Shown here in pieces: positions 1,069 through 60,545 of a stretch of 64,000 nucleotides of DNA. Position numbers and translations under genes: made by a program. The number at the start of each line of letters is the position of its first letter. Position 1 is the first letter of the stretch. Source of the stretch: Vitrella brassicaformis CCMP3155 (Eukaryota > Protista > Chromerida); assembly GCA_001179505.1 (NCBI GenBank), contig CDMY01000646.1, positions 62,001 through 126,000 on the forward strand, in the 5' to 3' direction. The notes under the pieces are model-generated. The model ran no database searches, had not been told where the DNA came from, and was given only the letters and a program-made list of their open reading frames with translations.

Positions 1069-3125
1069 ATGGCAAGGATGGCGGATGTCGTGACGCCCAT
1101 CATGGGCAAGTCGTACAATGAGGACGGCAGCCACTGGCAGCAGGTGCCTGCCGACACACTCAGACAGACAGACAGACACGCTTGCCGGCATCCCTTGCTG
1201 CATTCACTCATTCACCTTGTGATTTGCTCTGTGCTGCAGGGTGCGGCGCGTCTGTGGCACTCAGTGGTGTCCGAGGGGCTCATCAAGACGCTCGTGGAAG
1301 AGCGGCAGAGAGGCAACAAAGGCCCCGTGTGGGCCCTCGACTGCGGGTAGGTTGGCACGCCACACCTGTGTCTTGACTTTCGTGTGTCGGCTCGATTGCT
1401 TGGACCGTGCAGGTGTGGTCACGGCAAGGCGTCCGACGGAATGATGGCGGCCGTCCTCAAGGCCATGCAAGAGCACCGAGATGAGATCGGCGGCAATCGG
1501 TGTCTGTGTGTCATCCACAACGACCTGCCATCCAACCACTGGGCAGAGCTCTTCAACACGGTCAATGCGCCGTCGGGCTACGCCGCTGAGGGGCCGCCGA
1601 GAGCCATGGCCTTTGCGTCCGGGAAGACAATGGTGAGGAACGGGGAGGGGAGGGCAACACGGGCGGCATTCATCGACTGTGTATGTGTGTTGTCTGCAGT
1701 ACGAGCGTCAGGCGCCCGACGAGAGTCTCCACTTGGTGGTCGCCATCAACTGCACACACTGGTACTAGTGTAGTGTGCATCTGAATGTGTGTGTGCGTGT
1801 CCATCCATCCATCCATCCATCTGTGTGTGTGTGTATGTGATGCACACACAGGATGGCTCACCAGCCGAGGCCCTTGTCTGATGGGCTGGTCTTCCAGTGC
1901 TCGACTGACACAGAGACCATACAAACATGGTTGCAGGTAGGTATGGCCCCCCCCCCCCCTTCCCCCCCCNNNNNNNNNNNNNNNNNNNNNNNNNNNNNNN
2001 NNNNNNNNNNNNNNNNNNNNNNNNNNNNNNNNNNNNNNNNNNNNNNNNNNNNNNNNNNNNNNNNNNNNNNNNNNNNNNNNNNNNNNNNNNNNNNNNNNNN
2101 NNNNNNNNNNNNNNNNNNNNNNNNNNNNNNNNNNNNNNNNNNNNNNNNNNNNNNNNNNNNNNNNNNNNNNNNNNNNNNNNNNNNNNNNNNNNNNNNNNNN
2201 NNNNNNNNNNNNNNNNNNNNNNNNNNNNNNNNNNNNNNNNNNNNNNNNNNNNNNNNNNNNNNNNNNNNNCCCCCCACACACAGTGTGCCTGTCCATTATT
2301 CTGGGGGCTCGGTGCACTGCAGGTCAAGCGGCTCGAGTGGGAGTCGTTTCTGCGCCACCGGAGTGCCGAGCTGGTCAAGGGCGGCCGCATCTTCGTGTCA
2401 TGGTACGAGTACGTGGGCAGGGAGGACGGCGGCTGGTTCAGGGCCATCGACAACGTCGTGAACGTCATGGCTGACGAGGGCTAGTAGACCCCCATATCAC
2501 ACACACGCACACAGTGAATGCTGTTGCTGTGTCAGGGTGTCTCGCGAGACGGCGAGCAAGGCGTCCCTGCCGTTTGTCTTCCTCCCTATGTCCAGTTTGC
2601 TGCAGCCGTGGGAGGGCGTCGACGACCGGCCCACGACGAGTGGCCCACTGCCCTCCCCCGCCCCACACACCGAGCTGCCGCTGCAGCTGGAGGCCATGTG
2701 GACGGGAGAGAACGAGATTTTCCTGCATGCCTACAACACGAGAGTGGCCTCCGGCCAATGCCACGAGGGTGAAGCCACCGAGATAGTATTCGACGAGGTG
2801 AGCAAACAAACACAACACTGACACACAGACCTGATGGATGACGTGTGTGTGTGTGTGTGTGCTTTTTGAATGTGTGCAGCTCGTGACGTCGGCCCGCGGC
2901 TGGACGGAGGGCATGGTCACCCCCTTCATGGCTGACGACTGCAAAACAGCAGCAGCGTCGGGCGGCCTCGAAGGTCACAATCCCGCTGATGCAGCTGATG
3001 GCGCCGTTGCGGCCAAGGTCAAGCAGTTCTACATGACACTGAGGAAGGAGTTTGTGCGTGTATTCGGCAACCGGCCGGACCCCCAGGGCATCAAGTGGCA
3101 TGTGTTCGTCATCAGGAAGGTCTGA
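1069..3125 (+). CDS. SABATH-family SAM-dependent carboxyl methyltransferase (Methyltransf_7-like), multi-exon
   Basis: Spliced exons give MARMADVVTPIMGKSYNEDG..., ALDCG|CGHGKAS (SAM motif DxGCxxG), HNDLPSNHWAELF (cf. NDLPxNDFNxLF), YERQAPDESLHLVVAINCTHW (cf. FYxRLFPxxSLH...HWLS) and WESFLRHRSAELVKGG (cf. FLxxRAxELxxGG). The junction at about 2480-2537 is ambiguous. An intron spans the first N-gap. Confidence 0.85.
1970..2269. other. Assembly gap (300 N)
   Basis: Run of 300 N flanked by poly-C. Confidence 1.
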
Positions 3126-16254: not shown

Positions 16255-19053
16255 GGGGAGAGAGAGGGGGACATCCTTGTGTGTGTGTGGATCTCTGTGT
16301 GTGTGGGTCTCTCTCTCTCTCTCTCTGTGCGTGTGTGTGAGGGCCACATGCTTACAAGCGTTGTTCATGACGATATCAAGCGACCCCCGTGTGCACATGA
16401 TGCTCATGGTGGTGCTGCTCTCCAAACACGGCACCGCCAGCAGAAACGTCCCATGCAGGCTGTCCTCGCCCACACCGCCGCTACCGCCGCTACCGCTACC
16501 ACCCCCCTCCACCAAATGCGTCAGCCGGAAGACCCCCGAGAGTGTGCCGCCCTGCTTGGGGATGCCCAGGGTGGCCGGCCCCTTCCCTGCTGCGTCTGCG
16601 TCATTGCTGGTGCTGCTGCCGTCGGTTGTGGTTGAGGGCTTGGTGTTGTCGCGGAGGAGCTTGATGTCGGAGGAGCTCATCCCGGGAATCGGAATGGGCG
16701 GAATGGTGCAGCCTGATGGATGGATGGATGTGTGTGTGTGTGTGGGGGGGGGGGGGGGNNNNNNNNNNNNNNNNNNNNNNNNNNNNNNNNNNNNNNNNNN
16801 NNNNNNNNNNNNNNNNNNNNNNNNNNNNNNNNNNNNNNNNNNNNNNNNNNNNNNNNNNNNNNNNNNNNNNNNNNNNNNNNNNNNNNNNNNNNNNNNNNNN
16901 NNNNNNNNNNNNNNNNNNNNNNNNNNNNNNNNNNNNNNNNNNNNNNNNNNNNNNNNNNNNNNNNNNNNNNNNNNNNNNNNNNNNNNNNNNNNNNNNNNNN
17001 NNNNNNNNNNNNNNNNNNNNNNNNNNNNNNNNNNNNNNNNNNNNNNNNNNNNNNNNNNGGGGGGGGGGGGGGGGTTTGACCCTGGTTTGTTTCTTGGAAT
17101 TCGGCGCAGATGGACTGCATGAGCGCTTCGTTGAGGACGCCCTTGAGCACCACTAGGTAACGCATCAGCTCTATCGACAAGGCCTCTGCGATGACAGACA
17201 GACAGACAGACAGAGAGGGAGGGAGGGAGAAAGCCATTTAGGCTGTGTGTGACCTGTGTGTGTGTGTGTGCGTCATATACCAGTGGTGCTGTATTGGGAG
17301 TGCCACACGCGCCCGAAGGGATTGAATGTGCCGTAGATGGACACACTCACCGGGATGCCCAACGCCGCCAAACGCATCTTGGCCTTCACACGCACACAAA
17401 AACACACACACAGACGTGTCGGCTGCACACGCTGCACACACACGAGTCCACTCATCTCATAACTCACCTCGGCAAACGCCTCTGGCTGTCTGAAGGGCTC
17501 CACAGCACACCACGACAGATCGCCGCTACCCTGCCACACACACACAGAGACAGAGAAGGAGACGTGTGTGTGGTGGTGGTGATGGTGGTTCTGCACTCAC
17601 AAGTATGTTTGCCCTCTGGTTGTAGGCGAGCTCCTGTGCGGCCCGGCCGCTGAAGACGAAGGGCGAGGGCGTCAGGGTGTGCTTGCCAGCTGCCCATATC
17701 CGGGGCAAGTACGAGCTCTGCACATACGCACACACACACACACACACATCCATGTGGAGGGAGGGGTTCATCTGTCTGGTCTTGCTGAGTGAACTGACCA
17801 CTAGTTTGTGATGGAGGTCCACGACGCAGGCGTGAATGTCTGTGCGGTTGATGAGGTCGAAGAACTGAGCGTTGCCCACATACACGTCTGCACAGCCACA
17901 GCCACGCGGAAAACCCCCCACACCCATTCCATTGTGCTGTGCCTGTCTGTCTGCTTCTGTTTGGGTCAGTCAGTGGGCCGCTCACCGACACCCTCGGCGT
18001 CCTGCAGCTCTTTCTTGATGCCATCTGCCTCCTCCTGAGCGGATGGACGGATGAGCAGTGGGTGAGCTGTGTGTGTGTGTGTGGTTGTGACGTACCTGGT
18101 TGAACGCGAAGATGGCTTTGATTCTGAAGCGCTTGTCGAGGCTCAGTATAGGGGCCTGCTCGTATCTGACACACACACACAGATGAGCCACACAGATGAG
18201 CCACACAGATGAGCCACACAGGGAGGGAGGGAGGGAGGGGCTGTGTGTCTGTGTGTGTACCTGTTCCAGAAAGCCCCCCCAATCAGTGCGATGTGGGTCT
18301 GGTCCTGGAAACTCTGCAATAGCAACGAACCGTCCATCCATCCATCTGTGTGGTGTGTGTGGGTGTGGGTGTGGTGCCTGCAGTTTGTTGAGGAGCTCGA
18401 TGGCGGAGGGGTACTTGGGGTCCAGCCGCAGGGCGCCCTCGGCATAGGCACGGGCCTGACACACACACACACCACACAGATGGATGGATGGATGTGTGTG
18501 TTTCCCTACTTCTGAGAGTCTGCCCTTGGCCTTGTAGCAGTTGGCGAGGTTGACGTAGGTCGACGGATGGGCCTCCCCCTTCATGTACTGCAAACTCACC
18601 TGCACACATAGACACCCGCACCATTGTAGTCTGGATGGATGGATGGATGTGTGTGTGTGTGCGTGTGTGTGCCTGGACCTACCTCGAAGTATTTGATGGC
18701 CCTGTCTATGTCGCCGATGCGCATAAAGATGCCCCCCAATATGTCCGGCACGTCCTCGCCGCTCCGCAACTGGTACCAGTTCTCGAAGACCAGCTGCACC
18801 ATCCCAGACGAAATCGGCCCCCACTGTCAGCCCGTTGTGTGTGTGTGTATGTGTTTGTGACCTCCAGGTCGTGCATGAGGTCGGCGTATCGCCGCTCAGC
18901 GCCGTATGTGGGCTGGCATGCGTTGCGGATGTCCTTGTGGAAGGACACGAACACTTCGGTGTCGTGACCCGAGTAGCGAAGCAGCGCCAGGATGTCCTTG
19001 AGCGAACACTGAGTGCCCCTGATCAGTTGACGGCCACACACCACATACCCCCC

Positions 19054-20389: not shown

Positions 20390-21842
20390 CACACACACGT
20401 GCGCTCTCCCTCTCTGTCTGTGTCTGTGTCTGTGTGTGGGAGGGTTGGGCACCTGAATGAACTCCTGCAGCGAGGCATGGTTCTGGCAGAAGCGAATGTT
20501 GGCCTGACAGACACGTCAACACGTGTGCAGTGAGTGCATCGTTCGTGTGTGTCCGGCGTACCTCAGCGAGGTCCGTGTAGACGTATTGGAAGGGGCGGGG
20601 CGGCAGACCCAGCGACTCCCACAGATCCTACACACACACAGCCATCCCCCNNNNNNNNNNNNNNNNNNNNNNNNNNNNNNNNNNNNNNNNNNNNNNNNNN
20701 NNNNNNNNNNNNNNNNNNNNNNNNNNNNNNNNNNNNNNNNNNNNNNNNNNNNNNNNNNNNNNNNNNNNNNNNNNNNNNNNNNNNNNNNNNNNNNNNNNNN
20801 NNNNNNNNNNNNNNNNNNNNNNNNNNNNNNNNNNNNNNNNNNNNNNNNNNNNNNNNNNNNNNNNNNNNNNNNNNNNNNNNNNNNNNNNNNNNNNNNNNNN
20901 NNNNNNNNNNNNNNNNNNNNNNNNNNNNNNNNNNNNNNNNNNNNNNNNNNCACCCCCCCCCCCCCCCCCCACACACGCACACACATATCGACACACACAC
21001 AGACACAACAGGGGCTTCCCGTCTTGGCCCACCGACCCACCTTGTATCGCAGCAGTGCCCGCAGCAGCAGAAAGGTGAACTTGCCGTGACCTGAAGGAAG
21101 GAATCAACACGACAACAAAACACACACAACGTGACACGTACGTGCGCACAACACGCCTTGCATTGCTCCCCCTCCTCTCCCCTGCTCTGCGTATGTCTGT
21201 GTGTCTGCTCAGGTAGGCACCTACCTGCGCCGATCTCTATGATGCGGACGGGCTGCGATTTGTCCACCCCAGCACACTGACACCAACACCACACACACAC
21301 GAACACACGAACACGCCTGCACCTGTGTGTGTTGGCATGGCATTGGGTGAGGGGTGTGTGGTGTGTGCGTACCGCAAACCAATCGCGGAGGTGGTTCGTG
21401 ATCAGCCTCCCATACGACTGAGCCAACCTGCACGCGTCAACACACACAAAGGGCATCTAGGGGCGTGTGTATGTGTGTGGAGTGTGTGAATTCCATCCAT
21501 CCCCACCGTGAGTTGCTCGTCACGAAGCTCGGCACTACGTTCTGCGTCCACGCAGCTATAGCCATCTACACAACAGTCGGACCAGTCCACACACATGGAT
21601 TGATTGATGAGTGCATCGTAATGGGTTCCTGTTTGTCCTCCACACCCTCACTGGTAGTATGTAGCCCGGGTACTACCTACCTTGGCATAGTAGCTCTTGA
21701 GAAGCTTCCACATGAGGCTCTTGGGCAGCGGCGTCCGCTCCTCCAGCACGAACTTGCTGTCGGGCTGCTGCTCAACCGGCATCTCGCCGCCCGATGACGC
21801 CACCTGCGTCACGGGCATCACGATGCCCTGCGGCGACGCCAT
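15504..21842 (-). CDS. Multi-domain protein: SAM-dependent methyltransferase (MidA/NDUFAF7-like superfamily) + TPR + Gfo/Idh/MocA-like oxidoreductase domain, >20 exons
   Basis: N-terminal part: SLMWKLLKSYY, VRIIEIGAG|SGKFTFLLL, YVYTDLAE, WLDFAIFDGN, AICNYVLDSL, MMIIGDKAY, HGSLSFMLNLHA. TPR part: LGGIFMRIGDIDRAIKYFE..STYVNLANCYKAKG..ARAYAEGALRLDPKYPSAIELL. Then THIALIGGAFW..RFRIKAIFAFNQEEA..FFDLINRTDIHACVVDL..RIWAAGKHTLTPSP. The gene spans two N-gaps. Confidence 0.8.
16759..17058. other. Assembly gap (300 N)
   Basis: Run of 300 N flanked by poly-G. Confidence 1.
20651..20950. other. Assembly gap (300 N)
   Basis: Run of 300 N flanked by C-rich tracts. Confidence 1.
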
Positions 21843-32859: not shown

Positions 32860-33159
32860 NNNNNNNNNNNNNNNNNNNNNNNNNNNNNNNNNNNNNNNNN
32901 NNNNNNNNNNNNNNNNNNNNNNNNNNNNNNNNNNNNNNNNNNNNNNNNNNNNNNNNNNNNNNNNNNNNNNNNNNNNNNNNNNNNNNNNNNNNNNNNNNNN
33001 NNNNNNNNNNNNNNNNNNNNNNNNNNNNNNNNNNNNNNNNNNNNNNNNNNNNNNNNNNNNNNNNNNNNNNNNNNNNNNNNNNNNNNNNNNNNNNNNNNNN
33101 NNNNNNNNNNNNNNNNNNNNNNNNNNNNNNNNNNNNNNNNNNNNNNNNNNNNNNNNNNN
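32860..33159. other. Assembly gap (300 N)
   Basis: Run of 300 N flanked by poly-C. Confidence 1.
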
Positions 33160-54277: not shown

Positions 54278-55270
54278 TCACACAGACGGGTCGCCGTACA
54301 TGCGGCACTGCGTCGTGGTGGCCTTGACGGCTTCCCAAATGCTCGCCTGAGCGGTGAACAGCGCTGTGTAGACCTGAGACACACACGTGGATGGACACAC
54401 ACACACACATGGATGGGCGTACGTATGAGACACGCGCAAAGGCGCTGACGTACTTACTTTGCCTGGGAAGACGCATGTGTAGGGGAAGTTGATCAAAGCA
54501 CACACCTGCACCCTGACATGCGAAGGCACAGAGAGAGGATGGGTAGATGCATCCCTGTCTCTGTCTCTCTCTGTGTCTCCGGCTCACTTGTACACGAAGA
54601 TGCACGCGCACAGGACGCCCATCAAAGTTGCGAGCACGCTGTTGATCATCGAAAACATGTTGTAACCTAAAACAGACACACAACCTCTGCATCCATCCAT
54701 CAATCTCCTGGTTGGTTGTCGCATTGACCTGTCTGTGCCCCNNNNNNNNNNNNNNNNNNNNNNNNNNNNNNNNNNNNNNNNNNNNNNNNNNNNNNNNNNN
54801 NNNNNNNNNNNNNNNNNNNNNNNNNNNNNNNNNNNNNNNNNNNNNNNNNNNNNNNNNNNNNNNNNNNNNNNNNNNNNNNNNNNNNNNNNNNNNNNNNNNN
54901 NNNNNNNNNNNNNNNNNNNNNNNNNNNNNNNNNNNNNNNNNNNNNNNNNNNNNNNNNNNNNNNNNNNNNNNNNNNNNNNNNNNNNNNNNNNNNNNNNNNN
55001 NNNNNNNNNNNNNNNNNNNNNNNNNNNNNNNNNNNNNNNNNTGGGCGTCAGGAACTTGTCGCGCATGGCCTTGACCTTCCGCCACTCGGTCTTGACCAGC
55101 CGCATCACCGCCTGTGTGAGCCGCTCTTGCCCCTCCGCGCCAGGGATGCTCACCATCCGATGCTGAACGACAGACAGATGGATGGATGGATGCATGGATT
55201 TATGTGTCTCTGTGTCTGTCTGTCTGTCTGTGGCTTGGTGTGTGTATGTGTGTGTGTGTGTGTGTGTGGC
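54278..55270 (-). pseudogene. 5'-truncated inverted copy of the secreted Cys-rich gene at 59270-60545
   Basis: Near-identical exons and introns (HRMVSIPGAEGQERLTQAVMRLVKTEWRKVKAMRDKFLTP; GYNMFSMINSVLATLMGVLCACIFVY; VYTALFTAQASIWEAVKATTTQCRMYG). Similarity stops in a CA repeat near 55270. Confidence 0.85.
54742..55041. other. Assembly gap (300 N)
   Basis: Run of 300 N. The paralog suggests about 226 bp of real sequence (59840-60065). Confidence 1.
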
Positions 55271-55496: not shown

Positions 55497-55867
55497 AGTG
55501 ACTGACTGGTCAACATGACATGCCCGTGTGGAGTGTGTGTGGGGGCTGCTGAATGGTCATCCCTGTTAAGTAGTCACAATGGCATGGCAGTCAATAAGCT
55601 GTACTACAAAGCTGTAATTAGCAATGTGTGTATTGGCCCGCCAGCGCGGGACCGAGCGAGCGAATACACACAGTTGCACCCACACACACACACCCTCACA
55701 CAGAGGAAGGAAGCTTGTCACTTCTTCAGAGACAAGCCTCCTCTCCCTTACCCCTTTCCAGGGCCCCCCACTCCTTATGCAGTCTCCTTTATACTTCCTC
55801 TCTTTTGGCACTCCCCAGCAAAATCAGGACAGGAGAGAGAGAGAGAGAGATCAAGTGTCTCTGCTGT

Positions 55868-57820
55868 CTACTTGGAAGGCAAAAATGCCGTCTGCTCGAG
55901 TGGGTTCTTGGCGACGGGCTCGGCTCGCCGGCGCCAAGAACCCACGAAGGAGAAGAAGACCAGCAAATGGCCGATGTGCACTGATGCAGTGCACGAACAA
56001 AAGGAGATGCACTGGAGGCGTACGTCTTGTGTGGTGTGTGCTCTACAGAACTACGGAATCCTTGATAGATATGGACCCCCCAGCTACGGAATGCCGGCCG
56101 CCTACCAACCTACCAACACACGAACTCTCCCACTCTCTGACTCACATGTAGTTCATATTGCGCGTAGATATGCCCTGCGGCGGCTGCACACACACATACA
56201 CACACACACACACGCACATAGCAGGGCTGAGGGAGACACGCATCGCGCCTCTGCCCATACCGGCTGAGCAATGAACTCCGTGGGGTACTCGTCAGGTATC
56301 GAGGACCTTGGCGGACTACCACCACCACCACTGCTGCTCAGCCGGGCAAACTCCTCCTGACACAGCACAACACACACAACGAATTACAAAACACAACGCT
56401 CGAACGCTCCCTCCGTCCGTTTGTCTCTATTCCACCTGTATGGTCTTGAGCTGGTTCATCATGGCCGCCATCGACACGGGTTCGACCGGACCAGCCCCAC
56501 TTCCACCGACCCCCCCTCCGCCAATCATGGGAGGCATCATCATCATGCTGCTGCTGTTGTTGACCATGCTCTTCGCACTGGGCGTACTCGGTTGCTGTGG
56601 CTGCTGGTGTGGTGACGTTGGCTGGGATATGGGGGTTTTCTGCTGCTGCTGCTGCTGCATGGGCTGCATGGGCTGCATCATCTGTGGGGGCATGCTCATC
56701 AGGGTGCTGGTGTTGTCTAGCTGGGGCAAGGCGCGGCCCTGCAGCTGCGCCAGGACCGTTGCCAGCATCTTGGTGCTCCTGCGGCGCCTACACACACCAC
56801 ACACACACACACACAGACAGACAGACAGAGAGAGAGTATGGTGGAAGTGTGTGTGTGCGCGTACCGATCCCCTCTAATTCCCTTTTCGGGGTCTCCGTCT
56901 TTGCCGTCGTCGCCCTTGATGGGCTCGTTGAGCAGCTTGGGCTTCTCCTCCTCTACGCGATCGAGGAACTCCAAATCACCCTGAACAGATGCACATTGAG
57001 ACGAGTCAGAGTATCGTGCGTGTGCGTGTGCGTGCGCGTGTGCGTGTGTGTGTGTGTGTGCGTGTGCTTTGCCGACTGCTTGTATCCTTGCGAGTATCTG
57101 TCCGATCCTCGAGGCCTCGTCAGCCTTCTCCCATGACTCCATCTCACCCTTGAGCATCGCCTGCTTCCACGCCGTCTTCACCTGACACACACATCACACA
57201 CACACACACACACACACATTGGTGTCTTTTGCACGTCTGCGTGTGTTGGGGGGAGAGGAGGGAGGGGGGGCTTGCCTGGAAGATGTACATTGAGAATCCG
57301 ACTTTGGCGACCAGGTCGCAGACGGTGAAGATGATGTCAAACAAGTCACCGCTCATGACGTCGAAGCCTACACAGAGACACAGAGGGACAGGGAGGGCCC
57401 TCTCTCCCTCTCTCCCTCTCTCTGTGTGTCTGCAACCCTCAGCACCTTCTGGGCCGATGAGCCAGGTGATGGGGAAGGGGATCCAGCTGAGCATGACCAC
57501 GAGCGCCGTCTTGCGCAGATAAGACGTCCCTGCACACATCCATATGGCCGCAGTGCACAGTGAAGAATGCCATCACACACAGACAGAGACAGGGACGGAG
57601 AGACAGAGCAATGAAGCCAATCGCCCTCCCCCTGGGTGTCTGCCGCCTGTGTGCTACACGACCGACCCGACCTTCGAAGAGGTTTTCTTTGAAATTGGTT
57701 GATTCCTGTATCACCAGGTTCATGGTGTAGATGACGATGCCGAAGAAAAACGCCCCGCAACAAAACACAATCATCTTGTAACCCCGCTCAGGAATGATAC
57801 TGAAGAGAAGAAAGAGAAAC

Positions 57821-57857
<37 letters not shown>

Positions 57858-58555
57858 ATCCACACACCCCCTCCTCACGCACACGCCCACACCCACCTGG
57901 CAAAAAGGGCGAAGGAGAGCATCATGAATGTCTGCAGGGTGATCTCGACCTTCCGATGGAACGCCCCCCCTCCCAACTCCACCAATTGGTAGGTAATCAC
58001 CGGGCAGGTCACACAGTACTGCACATACTTGGCCGTGTCCACCTCGAACCCGTTGTCGAGGCGGATGTTGTCCAGCCTGCTCAGCTGCACCAGGTTGAAC
58101 AGGCCCGTGTACAGCAGCATGAACGAGTTGACCGCCGAGCAAAAGTTGAAGCGCCGCTCTCTCTCGTTGGGCACGTTCGGGTCGGGCCGCTTGTTCCACA
58201 GCCACAGGCCGAACGCTGCAGATGGACGGACAGACAAAGAGCAGTTCTCATCCCTCCCCGCCCCCGCTGCACACTGCACGGCAAACCTGAGAAAAAGATG
58301 GTTGAGAAGATCCTGGAGCCCAACTGACCAGCAGAGAGAGAGAGAGGGAGAGAGACCGACAGGCGTACAGCACAAACATACCCCGTCCCCCCCACGGGAA
58401 CCTACCACTGCGTCGCTGAGGTCCATGGGGCTGCCATCGTCGTCCTCTTTCTCTGGCGCTGACGTCTGGCCATAAGCGCCGGCCATCATCACGCTGCAGC
58501 AAGCCACCACGCCACCCAGTAGCAACCACCACGGTGACCTTTGTGCACCCGCCAT
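55868..58555 (-). CDS. Type-1 (microbial) rhodopsin with a signal peptide and a long cytoplasmic C-terminal tail (3' end uncertain)
   Basis: Signal peptide MAGAQRSPWWLLLGGVVACCSVMMAGAYG. Helix 3 DTAKYVQYCVTCPVI, helix 6 MLSWIPFPITWLIGPEG, helix 7 TVCDLVAKVGFSMYIF with the DxxxK Schiff-base Lys (codon 57303-57305). The tail has helical and Q/M/P-rich segments. Confidence 0.92.
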
Positions 58556-59269
58556 CCTTGGGGGAAAGGGGAGGGAGGGACGATATCGGGGCCGGATTTG
58601 GGGCCCGGCCCGGATCGTCGCATGCGCGTCACCTTGCCGTCGGACTCTGGCTGCACTCGTAGACGTGCGGCGATCGCGACGTTTGCGGCCGCATGATGGG
58701 AGAAAAGTCACCAAATGGACGGGGAGGGGAGATATATCCCGGGAACGACGCCGCCGTCATCAAAAGTCGGGGTGGGCGTATTTAAATGGTCAGACCCCAT
58801 ACGGACAGATACAATCGTCACTTCGGGCTGTGTAGATGAGTTCTCGAGATACACTGTAGGTGAGAAGCACCATTGCTTGTTGCTTGTTGCTTGTTTTGTG
58901 TGAGTGAGTGAGTGAGTGATGTCGATGGGTGGGTGGCTGGCTGGTGATTGAATGGATGGATGGCTGCAAGTGCATGGTGAATCAATGAGTCTGTTTCTCG
59001 TGAGAACGTGCTACCTGTGTCTGTGTGGTGTCGACGCCTGTCTGTGTGTACAGGCGGTGTGTCAGGATTGTTTTGAGAAGTGCATGGCCTGGCCTCCATG
59101 CCGACAAATTGCGCTTAACACACTCTCCCGCTGAAAAGAGGTTGAGTGAGTGTTTGATTCAGACAAATGGATTCGTGCATGAATGATTAACAAACGTGTA
59201 CTGTACACACGCGTTCACTCTCCCTGATCGATCAATCAATTCATCAGTCCGTCGTCAAAACCAACAACC

Positions 59270-60545
59270 ATGACTCAACGCGCTCTGCTGCTGGCGTGTT
59301 ATTGGTGTCTCATCGCCGCTCTCAGCAGCGGCTGCGATGCCTATCAGCTACCTGAAGCAATCACGCAGGAAGTCTCGGCGGCACTCATGCGGTCAGGCCA
59401 AACACACGAATCTCACTGCAGCGTACTTCATTTGCTTGTCAATGCAGGAAGCATGGCTCAGGATACGTGGCGTACTTCCGAGGCATGCTGGCCGACCTGG
59501 GCAACTCGACCATGGACGACAGCAACGACCTGCACATCATGCCGCCTCTCGACGACACAGACGAGCGGCAAATCACTCTGTCACTCAAACCTGACGAACA
59601 AACCATCTACGTCAGCCACACACACACACATACACACACCAGGCCACAGACAGACCGACAGACAGACACAGAGACACATAAATCCATGCATCCATCCATC
59701 CATCTGTCTGTCGTTCAGCATCGGATGGTGAGCATCCCTGGCGCGGAGGGGCAAGAGCGGCTCACACAGGCGGTGATGCGGCTGGTCAAGACCGAGTGGC
59801 GGAAGGTCAAGGCCATGCGCGACAAGTTCCTGACGCCCAACCAGGCCCGATTCCAGGAGATCAACGCACTGGCCAAGCAGCTTCCCTTTGCCAAGGGAGG
59901 CAACGCATACAACAACCAGTAAAAATGGATGGATGGATGGATGGGTGGGTGGGACACGACACTGTGTGTGTGTGTGTCGGTAGGAACACTGACACTCCAT
60001 GTGGGAGTGCAGCCGAGTGCGAGCGCATGCAGGAAATCGTCAACAAATGCTACTTCATCCGAAACGGGGCACAGACAGGTCAATGCGACAACCAACCAGG
60101 AGATTGATGGATGGATGCAGAGGTTGTGTGTCTGTTTTAGGTTACAACATGTTTTCGATGATCAACAGCGTGCTCGCAACTTTGATGGGCGTCCTGTGCG
60201 CGTGCATCTTCGTGTACAAGTGAGCCGGAGACACAGAGAGAGACAGAGACAGGGATGCATCCACCCATCCTCTCTCTGTGCCTTCGCATGTCAGGGTGCA
60301 GGTGTGTGCTTTGATCAACTTCGCATACGCATGCGTCTTCCCCGGCAAAGTGAGTACGTCGGCGCCTGTGCGCGTGTCTCATAACGCCCATCCATGTGTG
60401 TGTGTGTGTCCATTCGCGTGTGTGTGTGTCAGGTCTACACAGCTCTGTTCACCGCTCAGGGAGCATTTGGGAAGCCGTCAAGGCAACCACGACGCAGTGC
60501 CGCATGTACGGGGCGCCACAAGTCTCCATGCTGCCTGGTTTGTGA
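59270..60545 (+). CDS. Secreted Cys-rich hypothetical protein, multi-exon (1-bp frameshift in the last exon relative to its paralog)
   Basis: Signal peptide MTQRALLLACYWCLIAALSSGCDA, then CGSAAECERMQEIVNKCYFIR, GVLCACIFVY, VQVCALINFAYACVFPGK and TTTQCRMYG. It has caggGAGC at about 60450 where the paralog has caggCGAGC. Confidence 0.75.

What the first reader, a model, noticed from the sequence alone, without database searches (positions are those of the whole stretch)
55868..58555. Atypical signal-peptide microbial rhodopsin (helix-3 K-Y-V-Q-Y-C-V-T-C-P) with a large non-enzymatic cytoplasmic tail
Seen: a spliced 7TM protein with the retinal-binding DxxxK (Asp 57315-57317, Lys 57303-57305), a cleavable-looking signal peptide, and a tail of about 200+ aa made of a charged helical segment plus a Q/M/P-rich disordered region. 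Known: in bacteriorhodopsin helix 3 reads R82-Y-A-D85-W86-L-F-T89-T90-P91 with D96 further down. Here these positions align to K, Q, Y, T, C and Q, so the main counterion/proton acceptor and the donor are both neutral, W86 is Tyr, and T90 is Cys as in channelrhodopsins and enzyme rhodopsins. Inference: this is not a proton pump. The FNLVQL..DN....F.VD...TCP and IQES...ENL..G.S..R segments resemble, from memory, the rhodopsin modules of bestrhodopsins and their dinoflagellate/chromerid relatives. I see no bestrophin, cyclase or PDE domain here, so it may be a stand-alone sensory photoreceptor or channel that signals through its tail.
Basis: partly seen in the sequence, partly recalled or inferred. 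Interest (0 to 1): 0.85.

Follow-up and report, generated by a model that had tools for sequence, protein, structure and literature searches.

The report
Known Vitrella anion channelrhodopsin VbACR2
This 11-exon gene encodes, residue for residue, VbACR2 of the alga Vitrella brassicaformis, a blue-light-gated chloride channel that was expressed and measured in 2023, so the finding is real but already known.

Summary
A minus-strand gene of 11 exons (58555 down to 56142) encodes a 506-aa protein. It has an N-terminal hydrophobic leader, seven transmembrane helices, K-Y-V-Q-Y-C-V-T-C-P in helix 3, D257xxxK261 in helix 7, and a tail of about 236 aa with no known domain.

My spliced translation is identical (506/506) to GenBank CEM28120.1 / UniProt A0A0G4GF51 of Vitrella brassicaformis CCMP3155. 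Kojima et al. 2023 (Sci Rep 13:6974, PMC10147648) expressed residues 1-319 of this protein and named it VbACR2. They found that it binds retinal and absorbs at about 440 nm. It passes Cl-, Br- and NO3- passively in light, but not SO4 2-, Na+ or H+. They also discussed Gln128, Ala165, Gly184 and Asp257, and my model has those residues at those positions.

The recalled likeness to bestrhodopsins is not supported.

The closest relatives are six Chromera velia paralogues and one Alphamonas edax protein. All six Chromera proteins keep Gln at the BR-D85 position.

Only the tail beyond residue 319 is unstudied. The scan has already followed up other rhodopsin genes of this same genome.

The parts
58406..58555 (-). 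Exon 1: start codon at 58555, putative signal peptide (aa 1-28) and acidic extracellular linker (aa 29-47)
   Evidence: in frame, GT donor. Identical to CEM28120.1.
58287..58323 (-). Exon 2 (37 nt): first part of TM1
   Evidence: AG/GT borders. Needed to keep the frame. Matches CEM28120.1.
57897..58215 (-). Exon 3: end of TM1, TM2, TM3 with KYVQYCVTCP (aa 125-134; Gln128 at the BR D85 position), and most of TM4 (Ala165)
   Evidence: Pfam PF01036 positions 45-112. 100% match to P0001 residues 64-168. Residues checked.
57672..57799 (-). Exon 4: end of TM4, TM5 (Gly184) and the IQESTNFKENLFEG loop
57446..57529 (-). Exon 5: TM6 (LSWIPFPITWLIGPEG)
   Evidence: Pfam PF01036 positions 165-188.
57276..57367 (-). 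Exon 6: TM7 with Asp257 (57315-57317) and the retinal-binding Lys261 (57303-57305). It is followed by a GC-AG intron.
   Evidence: Pfam PF01036 positions 193-217..
57077..57181 (-). Exon 7: helix that continues TM7 on the cytoplasmic side (aa 271-305). Trp275 is invariant in the family.
56865..56980 (-). Exon 8: charged helical and acidic segment (aa 306-344). The published construct ends at aa 319, inside this exon.
56436..56787 (-). Exon 9: Q/M/P/S-rich low-complexity tail (aa 344-461), mostly modelled below pLDDT 50, and the start of a short helix (aa 450-469)
   Evidence: Contigs of run X1 lie on 56436-56510 and 56548-56728.
56261..56356 (-). Exon 10: rest of the short helix and a G/S/P-rich stretch
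   Evidence: A contig of run X1 joins 56356 to 56436, skipping 79 nt with GT..AG on the minus strand. That is exactly intron 9 of the model.
56142..56183 (-). Exon 11: last 13 codons and the TGA stop (56142-56144)
   Evidence: The 506-aa length equals CEM28120.1.

Best explanation
The gene is VbACR2 of Vitrella brassicaformis, a light-gated anion channel. Retinal is bound as a protonated Schiff base to Lys261, and Asp257 is the likely counterion. The BR-D85 position is a neutral Gln128, so there is no nearby proton acceptor, as in other anion channelrhodopsins. Blue light (about 440 nm) starts a photocycle that goes through a red-shifted P530 state and recovers in about 218 ms. During this cycle a passive pore for monovalent anions opens inside the 7TM domain. 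The published measurements show these steps. The following are inferred. The N-terminal leader is a cleaved signal peptide that puts the N-terminus outside the cell. The long C-terminal tail is not needed for gating. It most likely serves placement, clustering or turnover in the cell, as is thought (from my own knowledge) for the long tails of other algal channelrhodopsins. The likely role in the alga is light sensing by membrane-potential change in the flagellate stage.
For: The spliced model is identical over 506 aa to P0001, which is CEM28120.1 / A0A0G4GF51 of V. brassicaformis CCMP3155. PMC10147648 names CEM28120 as VbACR2. Its absorption and action maxima are at 440 nm. Photocurrents reverse near 0 mV. 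The reversal potential shifts by 65.6 mV when external Cl- drops to 9 mM, against a Nernst value of 71.2 mV. Br- and NO3- pass, but SO4 2-, Na+ and H+ do not. P530 decays in 218 ms. The residues the paper discusses (Gln128, Ala165, Gly184, Asp257) sit at those numbers in my model. The full protein scores 83 bits on Pfam PF01036, and the rhodopsin fold matches at Z about 26. The tail has no domain and is mostly low-confidence in the model. A spliced contig confirms intron 9, so the tail exons are joined as modelled.
Against: The measurements were made on a codon-optimised, truncated construct (aa 1-319) in mammalian cells, not in Vitrella, so the native role and location are unknown. The paper could not obtain pigment in DDM detergent, its spectrum was broad, and it detected no M intermediate. 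RNA support here is thin. Signal-peptide cleavage is not shown.
Confidence: 0.95

Rival explanations
1. It is a stand-alone sensory rhodopsin that signals through its cytoplasmic tail to a partner protein, and the channel current is secondary.
For: The tail is long (236 aa). Its membrane-proximal helix (271-322) is 33-46% identical in three Chromera paralogues, and a short helix at 450-469 is modelled at pLDDT about 65. The best structural matches include sensory rhodopsin II, but they are tied with pumps.
Against: The construct without residues 320-506 gives peak currents of 0.89 nA with near-Nernstian Cl- dependence. The tail has no recognisable signalling domain. The Q/M/P-rich part is poorly conserved.
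Confidence: 0.04
2. It is a relative of the rhodopsin modules of bestrhodopsins that has lost or never gained the bestrophin channel.
For: Bestrhodopsins do occur in dinoflagellates, which are also alveolates.
Against: There is no bestrophin domain in this protein or in the long relatives I scanned. The solved bestrhodopsin (7PL9, named) is absent from the top 60 sequence matches and the top 50 structure matches. Bestrhodopsins absorb at 661 nm and switch to 11-cis retinal, whereas this protein absorbs at 440 nm. No bestrhodopsin sequence was available for a direct alignment, so a remote link is not excluded.
Confidence: 0.03
3. It is a cation channel of the cryptophyte bacteriorhodopsin-like type (GtCCR/KCR).
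For: By single-sequence search with exon 3, the best solved match was GtCCR2, which shares YV-YC-TCP (E 0.021). It also has Tyr at the W86 position.
Against: The D-T-D motif of that family is Q-T-Q here. The published ion substitutions exclude Na+ and H+ transport. With the whole 7TM domain, GtCCR2 ranks below many pumps and sensors.
Confidence: 0.01

Closest known systems
VbACR2 (GenBank CEM28120.1), Kojima et al. 2023, Sci Rep 13:6974
   Same: Identical over all 506 residues. Same organism.
   Different: Nothing in the protein. The paper studied only residues 1-319.
Chromera velia paralogues Cvel_747, Cvel_26554, Cvel_23116, Cvel_13779, Cvel_15662 and Cvel_21152, and Alphamonas edax P014862 (the 'Colpodellida ChRs')
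   Same: 35-47% identical in exon 3. All share the TCP motif, Gln at the BR D96 position and the Lys (Cvel_26554's model lacks helix 7). The six Chromera proteins also share Gln at D85, and those with helix 7 share Asp at D212. Cvel_747, Cvel_26554 and Cvel_21152 share the helix after TM7, and the first two also have Q/M/P-rich tails.
   Different: Uncharacterised. The tails differ in length and sequence. The Alphamonas protein has Val at D85 and Asn at D212.
Cryptophyte anion channelrhodopsins GtACR1 and GtACR2
   Same: Light-gated monovalent anion channels with a neutral residue at the BR D85 position. GtACR2 is also blue-absorbing.
   Different: A separate branch in the published tree. The neutral residue is Gln here, and mainly Ser in other ACRs. 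Position 99, which corresponds to GtACR1 Glu68, is Thr here. Cl-, Br- and NO3- pass about equally here, whereas GtACR1 and GtACR2 prefer Br- and NO3-. No M state was seen.
CEL94649, the second V. brassicaformis channelrhodopsin-like protein
   Same: Same genome. Grouped with VbACR2 as a 'Colpodellida ChR' by the paper. Also a light-gated channel.
   Different: Absorbs at 550 nm, has Glu96, gave only 59 pA, and is suggested to be a cation channel. It was not among the 16 hits of the exon 3 search.
Bestrhodopsins (rhodopsin-bestrophin fusions, PDB 7PL9)
   Same: Type-1 rhodopsin fold. Associated with anion conductance. Occur in alveolates, among other groups.
   Different: In bestrhodopsins the pore is a fused bestrophin pentamer and the rhodopsins absorb far-red light. 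Here there is no bestrophin domain, and the protein with no other channel domain gives the current.

Membership tests
Microbial (type-1) rhodopsin, Pfam PF01036 | Profile match above the curated cut-off | tested here: met
   83.1 bits against a cut-off of 24.6, residues 93-271.
Microbial (type-1) rhodopsin, Pfam PF01036 | Seven-helix fold with the Schiff-base Lys in helix 7 | tested here: met
   Seven helices at pLDDT 79-94. Z about 26 to SRII and BR. Lys261 in DLVAK.
Microbial (type-1) rhodopsin, Pfam PF01036 | Binds retinal and absorbs visible light | not testable with these tools
   Published: maximum at 440 nm in SMA lipid particles.
Anion channelrhodopsin (functional class) | Neutral residue at the BR Asp85 position | tested here: met
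   Gln128. The paper calls Gln unique among ACRs.
Anion channelrhodopsin (functional class) | Passive, light-gated, anion-selective current | not testable with these tools
   Published: currents reverse near 0 mV, and the reversal potential shifts by 65.6 mV on Cl- removal. No Na+ or H+ transport.
Colpodellida/chromerid channelrhodopsin branch | Nearest relatives are chromerid and colpodellid proteins that share the helix-3 motif | tested here: met
   The top eight hits of an exhaustive search are Vitrella, Chromera and Alphamonas proteins. Motif table.
Bestrhodopsin | Rhodopsin module(s) fused to a bestrophin channel domain | tested here: not met
   Only PF01036 is found in the 506-aa protein, and the tail has no domain.
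Bestrhodopsin | Far-red absorbing state (about 661 nm) | not testable with these tools
   Published values are 661 nm for bestrhodopsin and 440 nm for this protein, so by the published values the feature is not met.
Cryptophyte BR-like cation channelrhodopsins (GtCCR/KCR) | Asp-Thr-Asp at the BR 85/89/96 positions | tested here: not met
   Gln-Thr-Gln.
Light-driven proton pump (BR type) | Carboxylate proton acceptor (D85) and donor (D96) | tested here: not met
   Both are Gln. Published currents reverse with voltage.

The most novel reading that the evidence does not exclude
The only unstudied part is the tail beyond residue 319. It has a membrane-proximal helix shared with three Chromera paralogues, a Q/M/P-rich disordered stretch, and a short helix at 450-469. 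The tail could set where the channel sits in the zoospore, cluster it, or tune its gating. Since Gln at the D85 position is kept in all six Chromera paralogues, the whole chromerid branch may be a distinct, Gln-type lineage of anion channels.
Probability: 0.15. Interest if true: 0.35.

Novelty: already known. Interest (0 to 1): 0.1.

Why it matters
It matters little as a discovery. The protein has a GenBank record, a name, an absorption spectrum, ion-selectivity data and a photocycle in the literature. The case does show that the first-stage reader can recover a multi-exon rhodopsin and its key residues correctly from raw sequence. What remains open is small: the native role of VbACR2 in Vitrella, what its tail does, and whether the Chromera paralogues with the same Gln are also anion channels.

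Tried and rejected
- **Word-index searches:** two searches found nothing beyond the protein itself. The first was limited to 153-488 aa and so could not see the 506-aa record. The exhaustive HMMER search was what found it.
- **Chance hit:** one hit of that search, P0009 (2378 aa), is a chitobiase/Fn3 repeat protein and is a chance match.
- **Solved structures:** I looked for a specific solved relative by sequence and profile and by fold. Pumps, sensors and channels are all nearly tied, so these searches do not place the protein in any subfamily.
- **Atlas feature search:** its three best clusters are named after a chlorophyte channelrhodopsin (ChR1/ChR2) chimera, an opsin family found largely in giant viruses, and ChRmine. 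This is a lead only.
- **Phylogeny:** I rely on the published tree.
- **Signal peptide:** no predictor was available.
- **RNA evidence:** no run on record as RNA holds the gene.

Full report
**Check of the observation**

Reading the minus strand of 55500-59000 shows a GC-rich eukaryotic gene whose introns are full of (TG)n, (CA)n and (CT)n runs. I built an exon model by hand and checked it by script. It has eleven exons, from the ATG at 58555 to the TGA at 56142-56144. Nine introns are GT-AG and one (intron 6) is GC-AG. Every junction is in frame, and the product is 506 aa.

The helix-3 string KYVQYCVTCP is residues 125-134.

Scanned separately, exons 3, 5 and 6 each hit Pfam Bac_rhodopsin at successive parts of the profile. 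The full protein scores 83.1 bits against a cut-off of 24.6.

**Identity**

A word-index search limited to 153-488 aa found nothing. An exhaustive HMMER search of 1.84 billion representative proteins with exon 3 (105 aa) returned 16 hits. The best was a 506-aa protein, P0001, that is 100% identical over residues 64-168. My spliced translation equals P0001 over its whole length.

The cluster look-up names P0001 as GenBank CEM28120.1 / UniProt A0A0G4GF51 of Vitrella brassicaformis CCMP3155.

**What is published**

A search for 'Vitrella' and 'rhodopsin' found Kojima et al. 2023 (PMC10147648). The paper expresses two V. brassicaformis proteins, CEL94649 and CEM28120, and names the second VbACR2. 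Its main results for VbACR2 are:

- Residues 1-319 were expressed in HEK293 and ND7/23 cells.
- The pigment absorbs at 440 nm in SMA lipid particles, and the action spectrum peaks at 440 nm.
- Peak photocurrent is 0.89 nA at -60 mV, and the current reverses near 0 mV.
- Lowering external Cl- to 9 mM shifts the reversal potential by 65.6 mV, against a Nernst value of 71.2 mV.
- Br- and NO3- pass about as well as Cl-. SO4 2-, Na+ and H+ do not pass.
- Flash photolysis shows a red-shifted P530 state that decays in 218 ms. No M state was detected.

The paper points out Gln128 at the BR Asp85 position, Asp257 as the likely counterion, and Ala165 and Gly184 as possible causes of the blue shift. My model has Q, D, A and G at those numbers. 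No later paper in the library mentions VbACR2.

**Relatives**

The next hits are six Chromera velia proteins (Cvel_747, 26554, 23116, 13779, 15662, 21152) and one from the colpodellid Alphamonas edax. They are 35-47% identical in exon 3. Weaker hits come from dinoflagellates and environmental samples.

In the family alignment and the residue table:

- The TCP motif and Gln at D96 are kept in all eight proteins, and the Lys in every protein whose model includes helix 7.
- Gln at the D85 position is kept in all six Chromera proteins.
- Asp at D212 is kept in every Chromera protein whose model includes helix 7.
- Alphamonas has Val at D85 and Asn at D212.
- The Cvel_26554 gene model lacks helix 7, probably because an exon was missed.

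**The tail**

The full protein has no Pfam domain other than the rhodopsin domain. The tail alone (270-506) gives nothing better than E 0.038.

In the AlphaFold2 model built on the family alignment, helix 7 runs on to about residue 289. Helices follow at 292-304 and 308-322. Residues 361-449 are below pLDDT 50. A short helix at 450-469 reaches about 65.

The low-complexity part is poorly conserved.

From my own knowledge, long tails without domains are usual in algal channelrhodopsins, so this is not odd for the class. Because the published construct lacks residues 320-506 and still conducts, the tail is not needed for gating.

**Transcript support**

No run on record as RNA holds the gene. 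One small run, guessed to be RNA (X1), has a contig that joins 56356 to 56436. It skips 79 nt with GT..AG on the minus strand, which is exactly my intron 9. The aligned part of the contig ends at 56261, the modelled end of exon 10. A second contig lies inside exon 9. The other runs, whose kind is not on record (probably DNA), hold the stretch unspliced. Exons 1-8 are supported only indirectly, by the fact that the protein built from this model folds, binds retinal and conducts.

**The bestrhodopsin idea**

Neither this protein nor the three long relatives I scanned (762-949 aa) has a bestrophin domain. The solved bestrhodopsin, 7PL9 (named in PMC10962995), does not appear in any of these lists:

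- the top 60 sequence matches
- the top 60 profile matches
- the top 50 Foldseek matches
- the top 50 VIA matches

Those lists are led by bacterial and archaeal pumps and sensors, with channelrhodopsins a little lower and all nearly tied. They confirm the fold and nothing finer. Bestrhodopsins absorb at 661 nm. I could not align a bestrhodopsin sequence directly, so a remote link is not excluded. Nothing supports one.

A single-exon search gave GtCCR2 as the best solved match, through the shared YV-YC-TCP string. However, the D-T-D motif of that family is Q-T-Q here, and cation transport is excluded by the published data.

**Verdict**

Its function is already shown by experiment: it is a blue-light-gated monovalent anion channel. 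Novelty is 'already known'. The scan has also followed up other rhodopsin genes on other pieces of this genome.

Noticed in passing
window 54294-55260 and 59617-60511: An inverted repeat of about 0.9 kb (96-98% identical) flanks the 4.36-kb segment that holds the whole VbACR2 gene. The left arm contains a 300-N scaffold gap (54742-55041). It may be a real inverted duplication or an assembly artefact.
   Followed up: partly
window 57182-57275 (minus strand): Intron 6, just after the exon that encodes helix 7, has a GC donor (GCAAGC...CAG) rather than GT. The GenBank protein requires this junction.
   Followed up: partly
window 56788-56864, 57368-57445, 57182-57275 (minus strand): Some introns carry (CA)n or (GA)n near the 5' end and (TG)n or (CT)n near the 3' end, and they fold back on themselves better than shuffles do: intron 8 z -3.9, intron 6 z -2.3, intron 5 z -2.0. 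Introns 3, 4 and 7 do not (z -0.7, -1.2, +2.3). Another first-stage note on this window flagged the same pattern.
   Followed up: partly
P0002, P0003, P0004, P0005, P0007, P0008 (Chromera velia): All six Chromera paralogues keep Gln at the BR D85 and D96 positions and Cys-Pro in helix 3, so they are candidate anion channels of the same type. None is characterised.
   Followed up: no
P0003 (Cvel_26554): The public gene model lacks the segment that encodes the end of helix 6 and all of helix 7, including the Lys. An exon was probably missed.
   Followed up: no
window 1970-2269, 16759-17058, 20651-20950, 32860-33159, 54742-55041: There are five scaffold gaps of exactly 300 N in the window.
   Followed up: no
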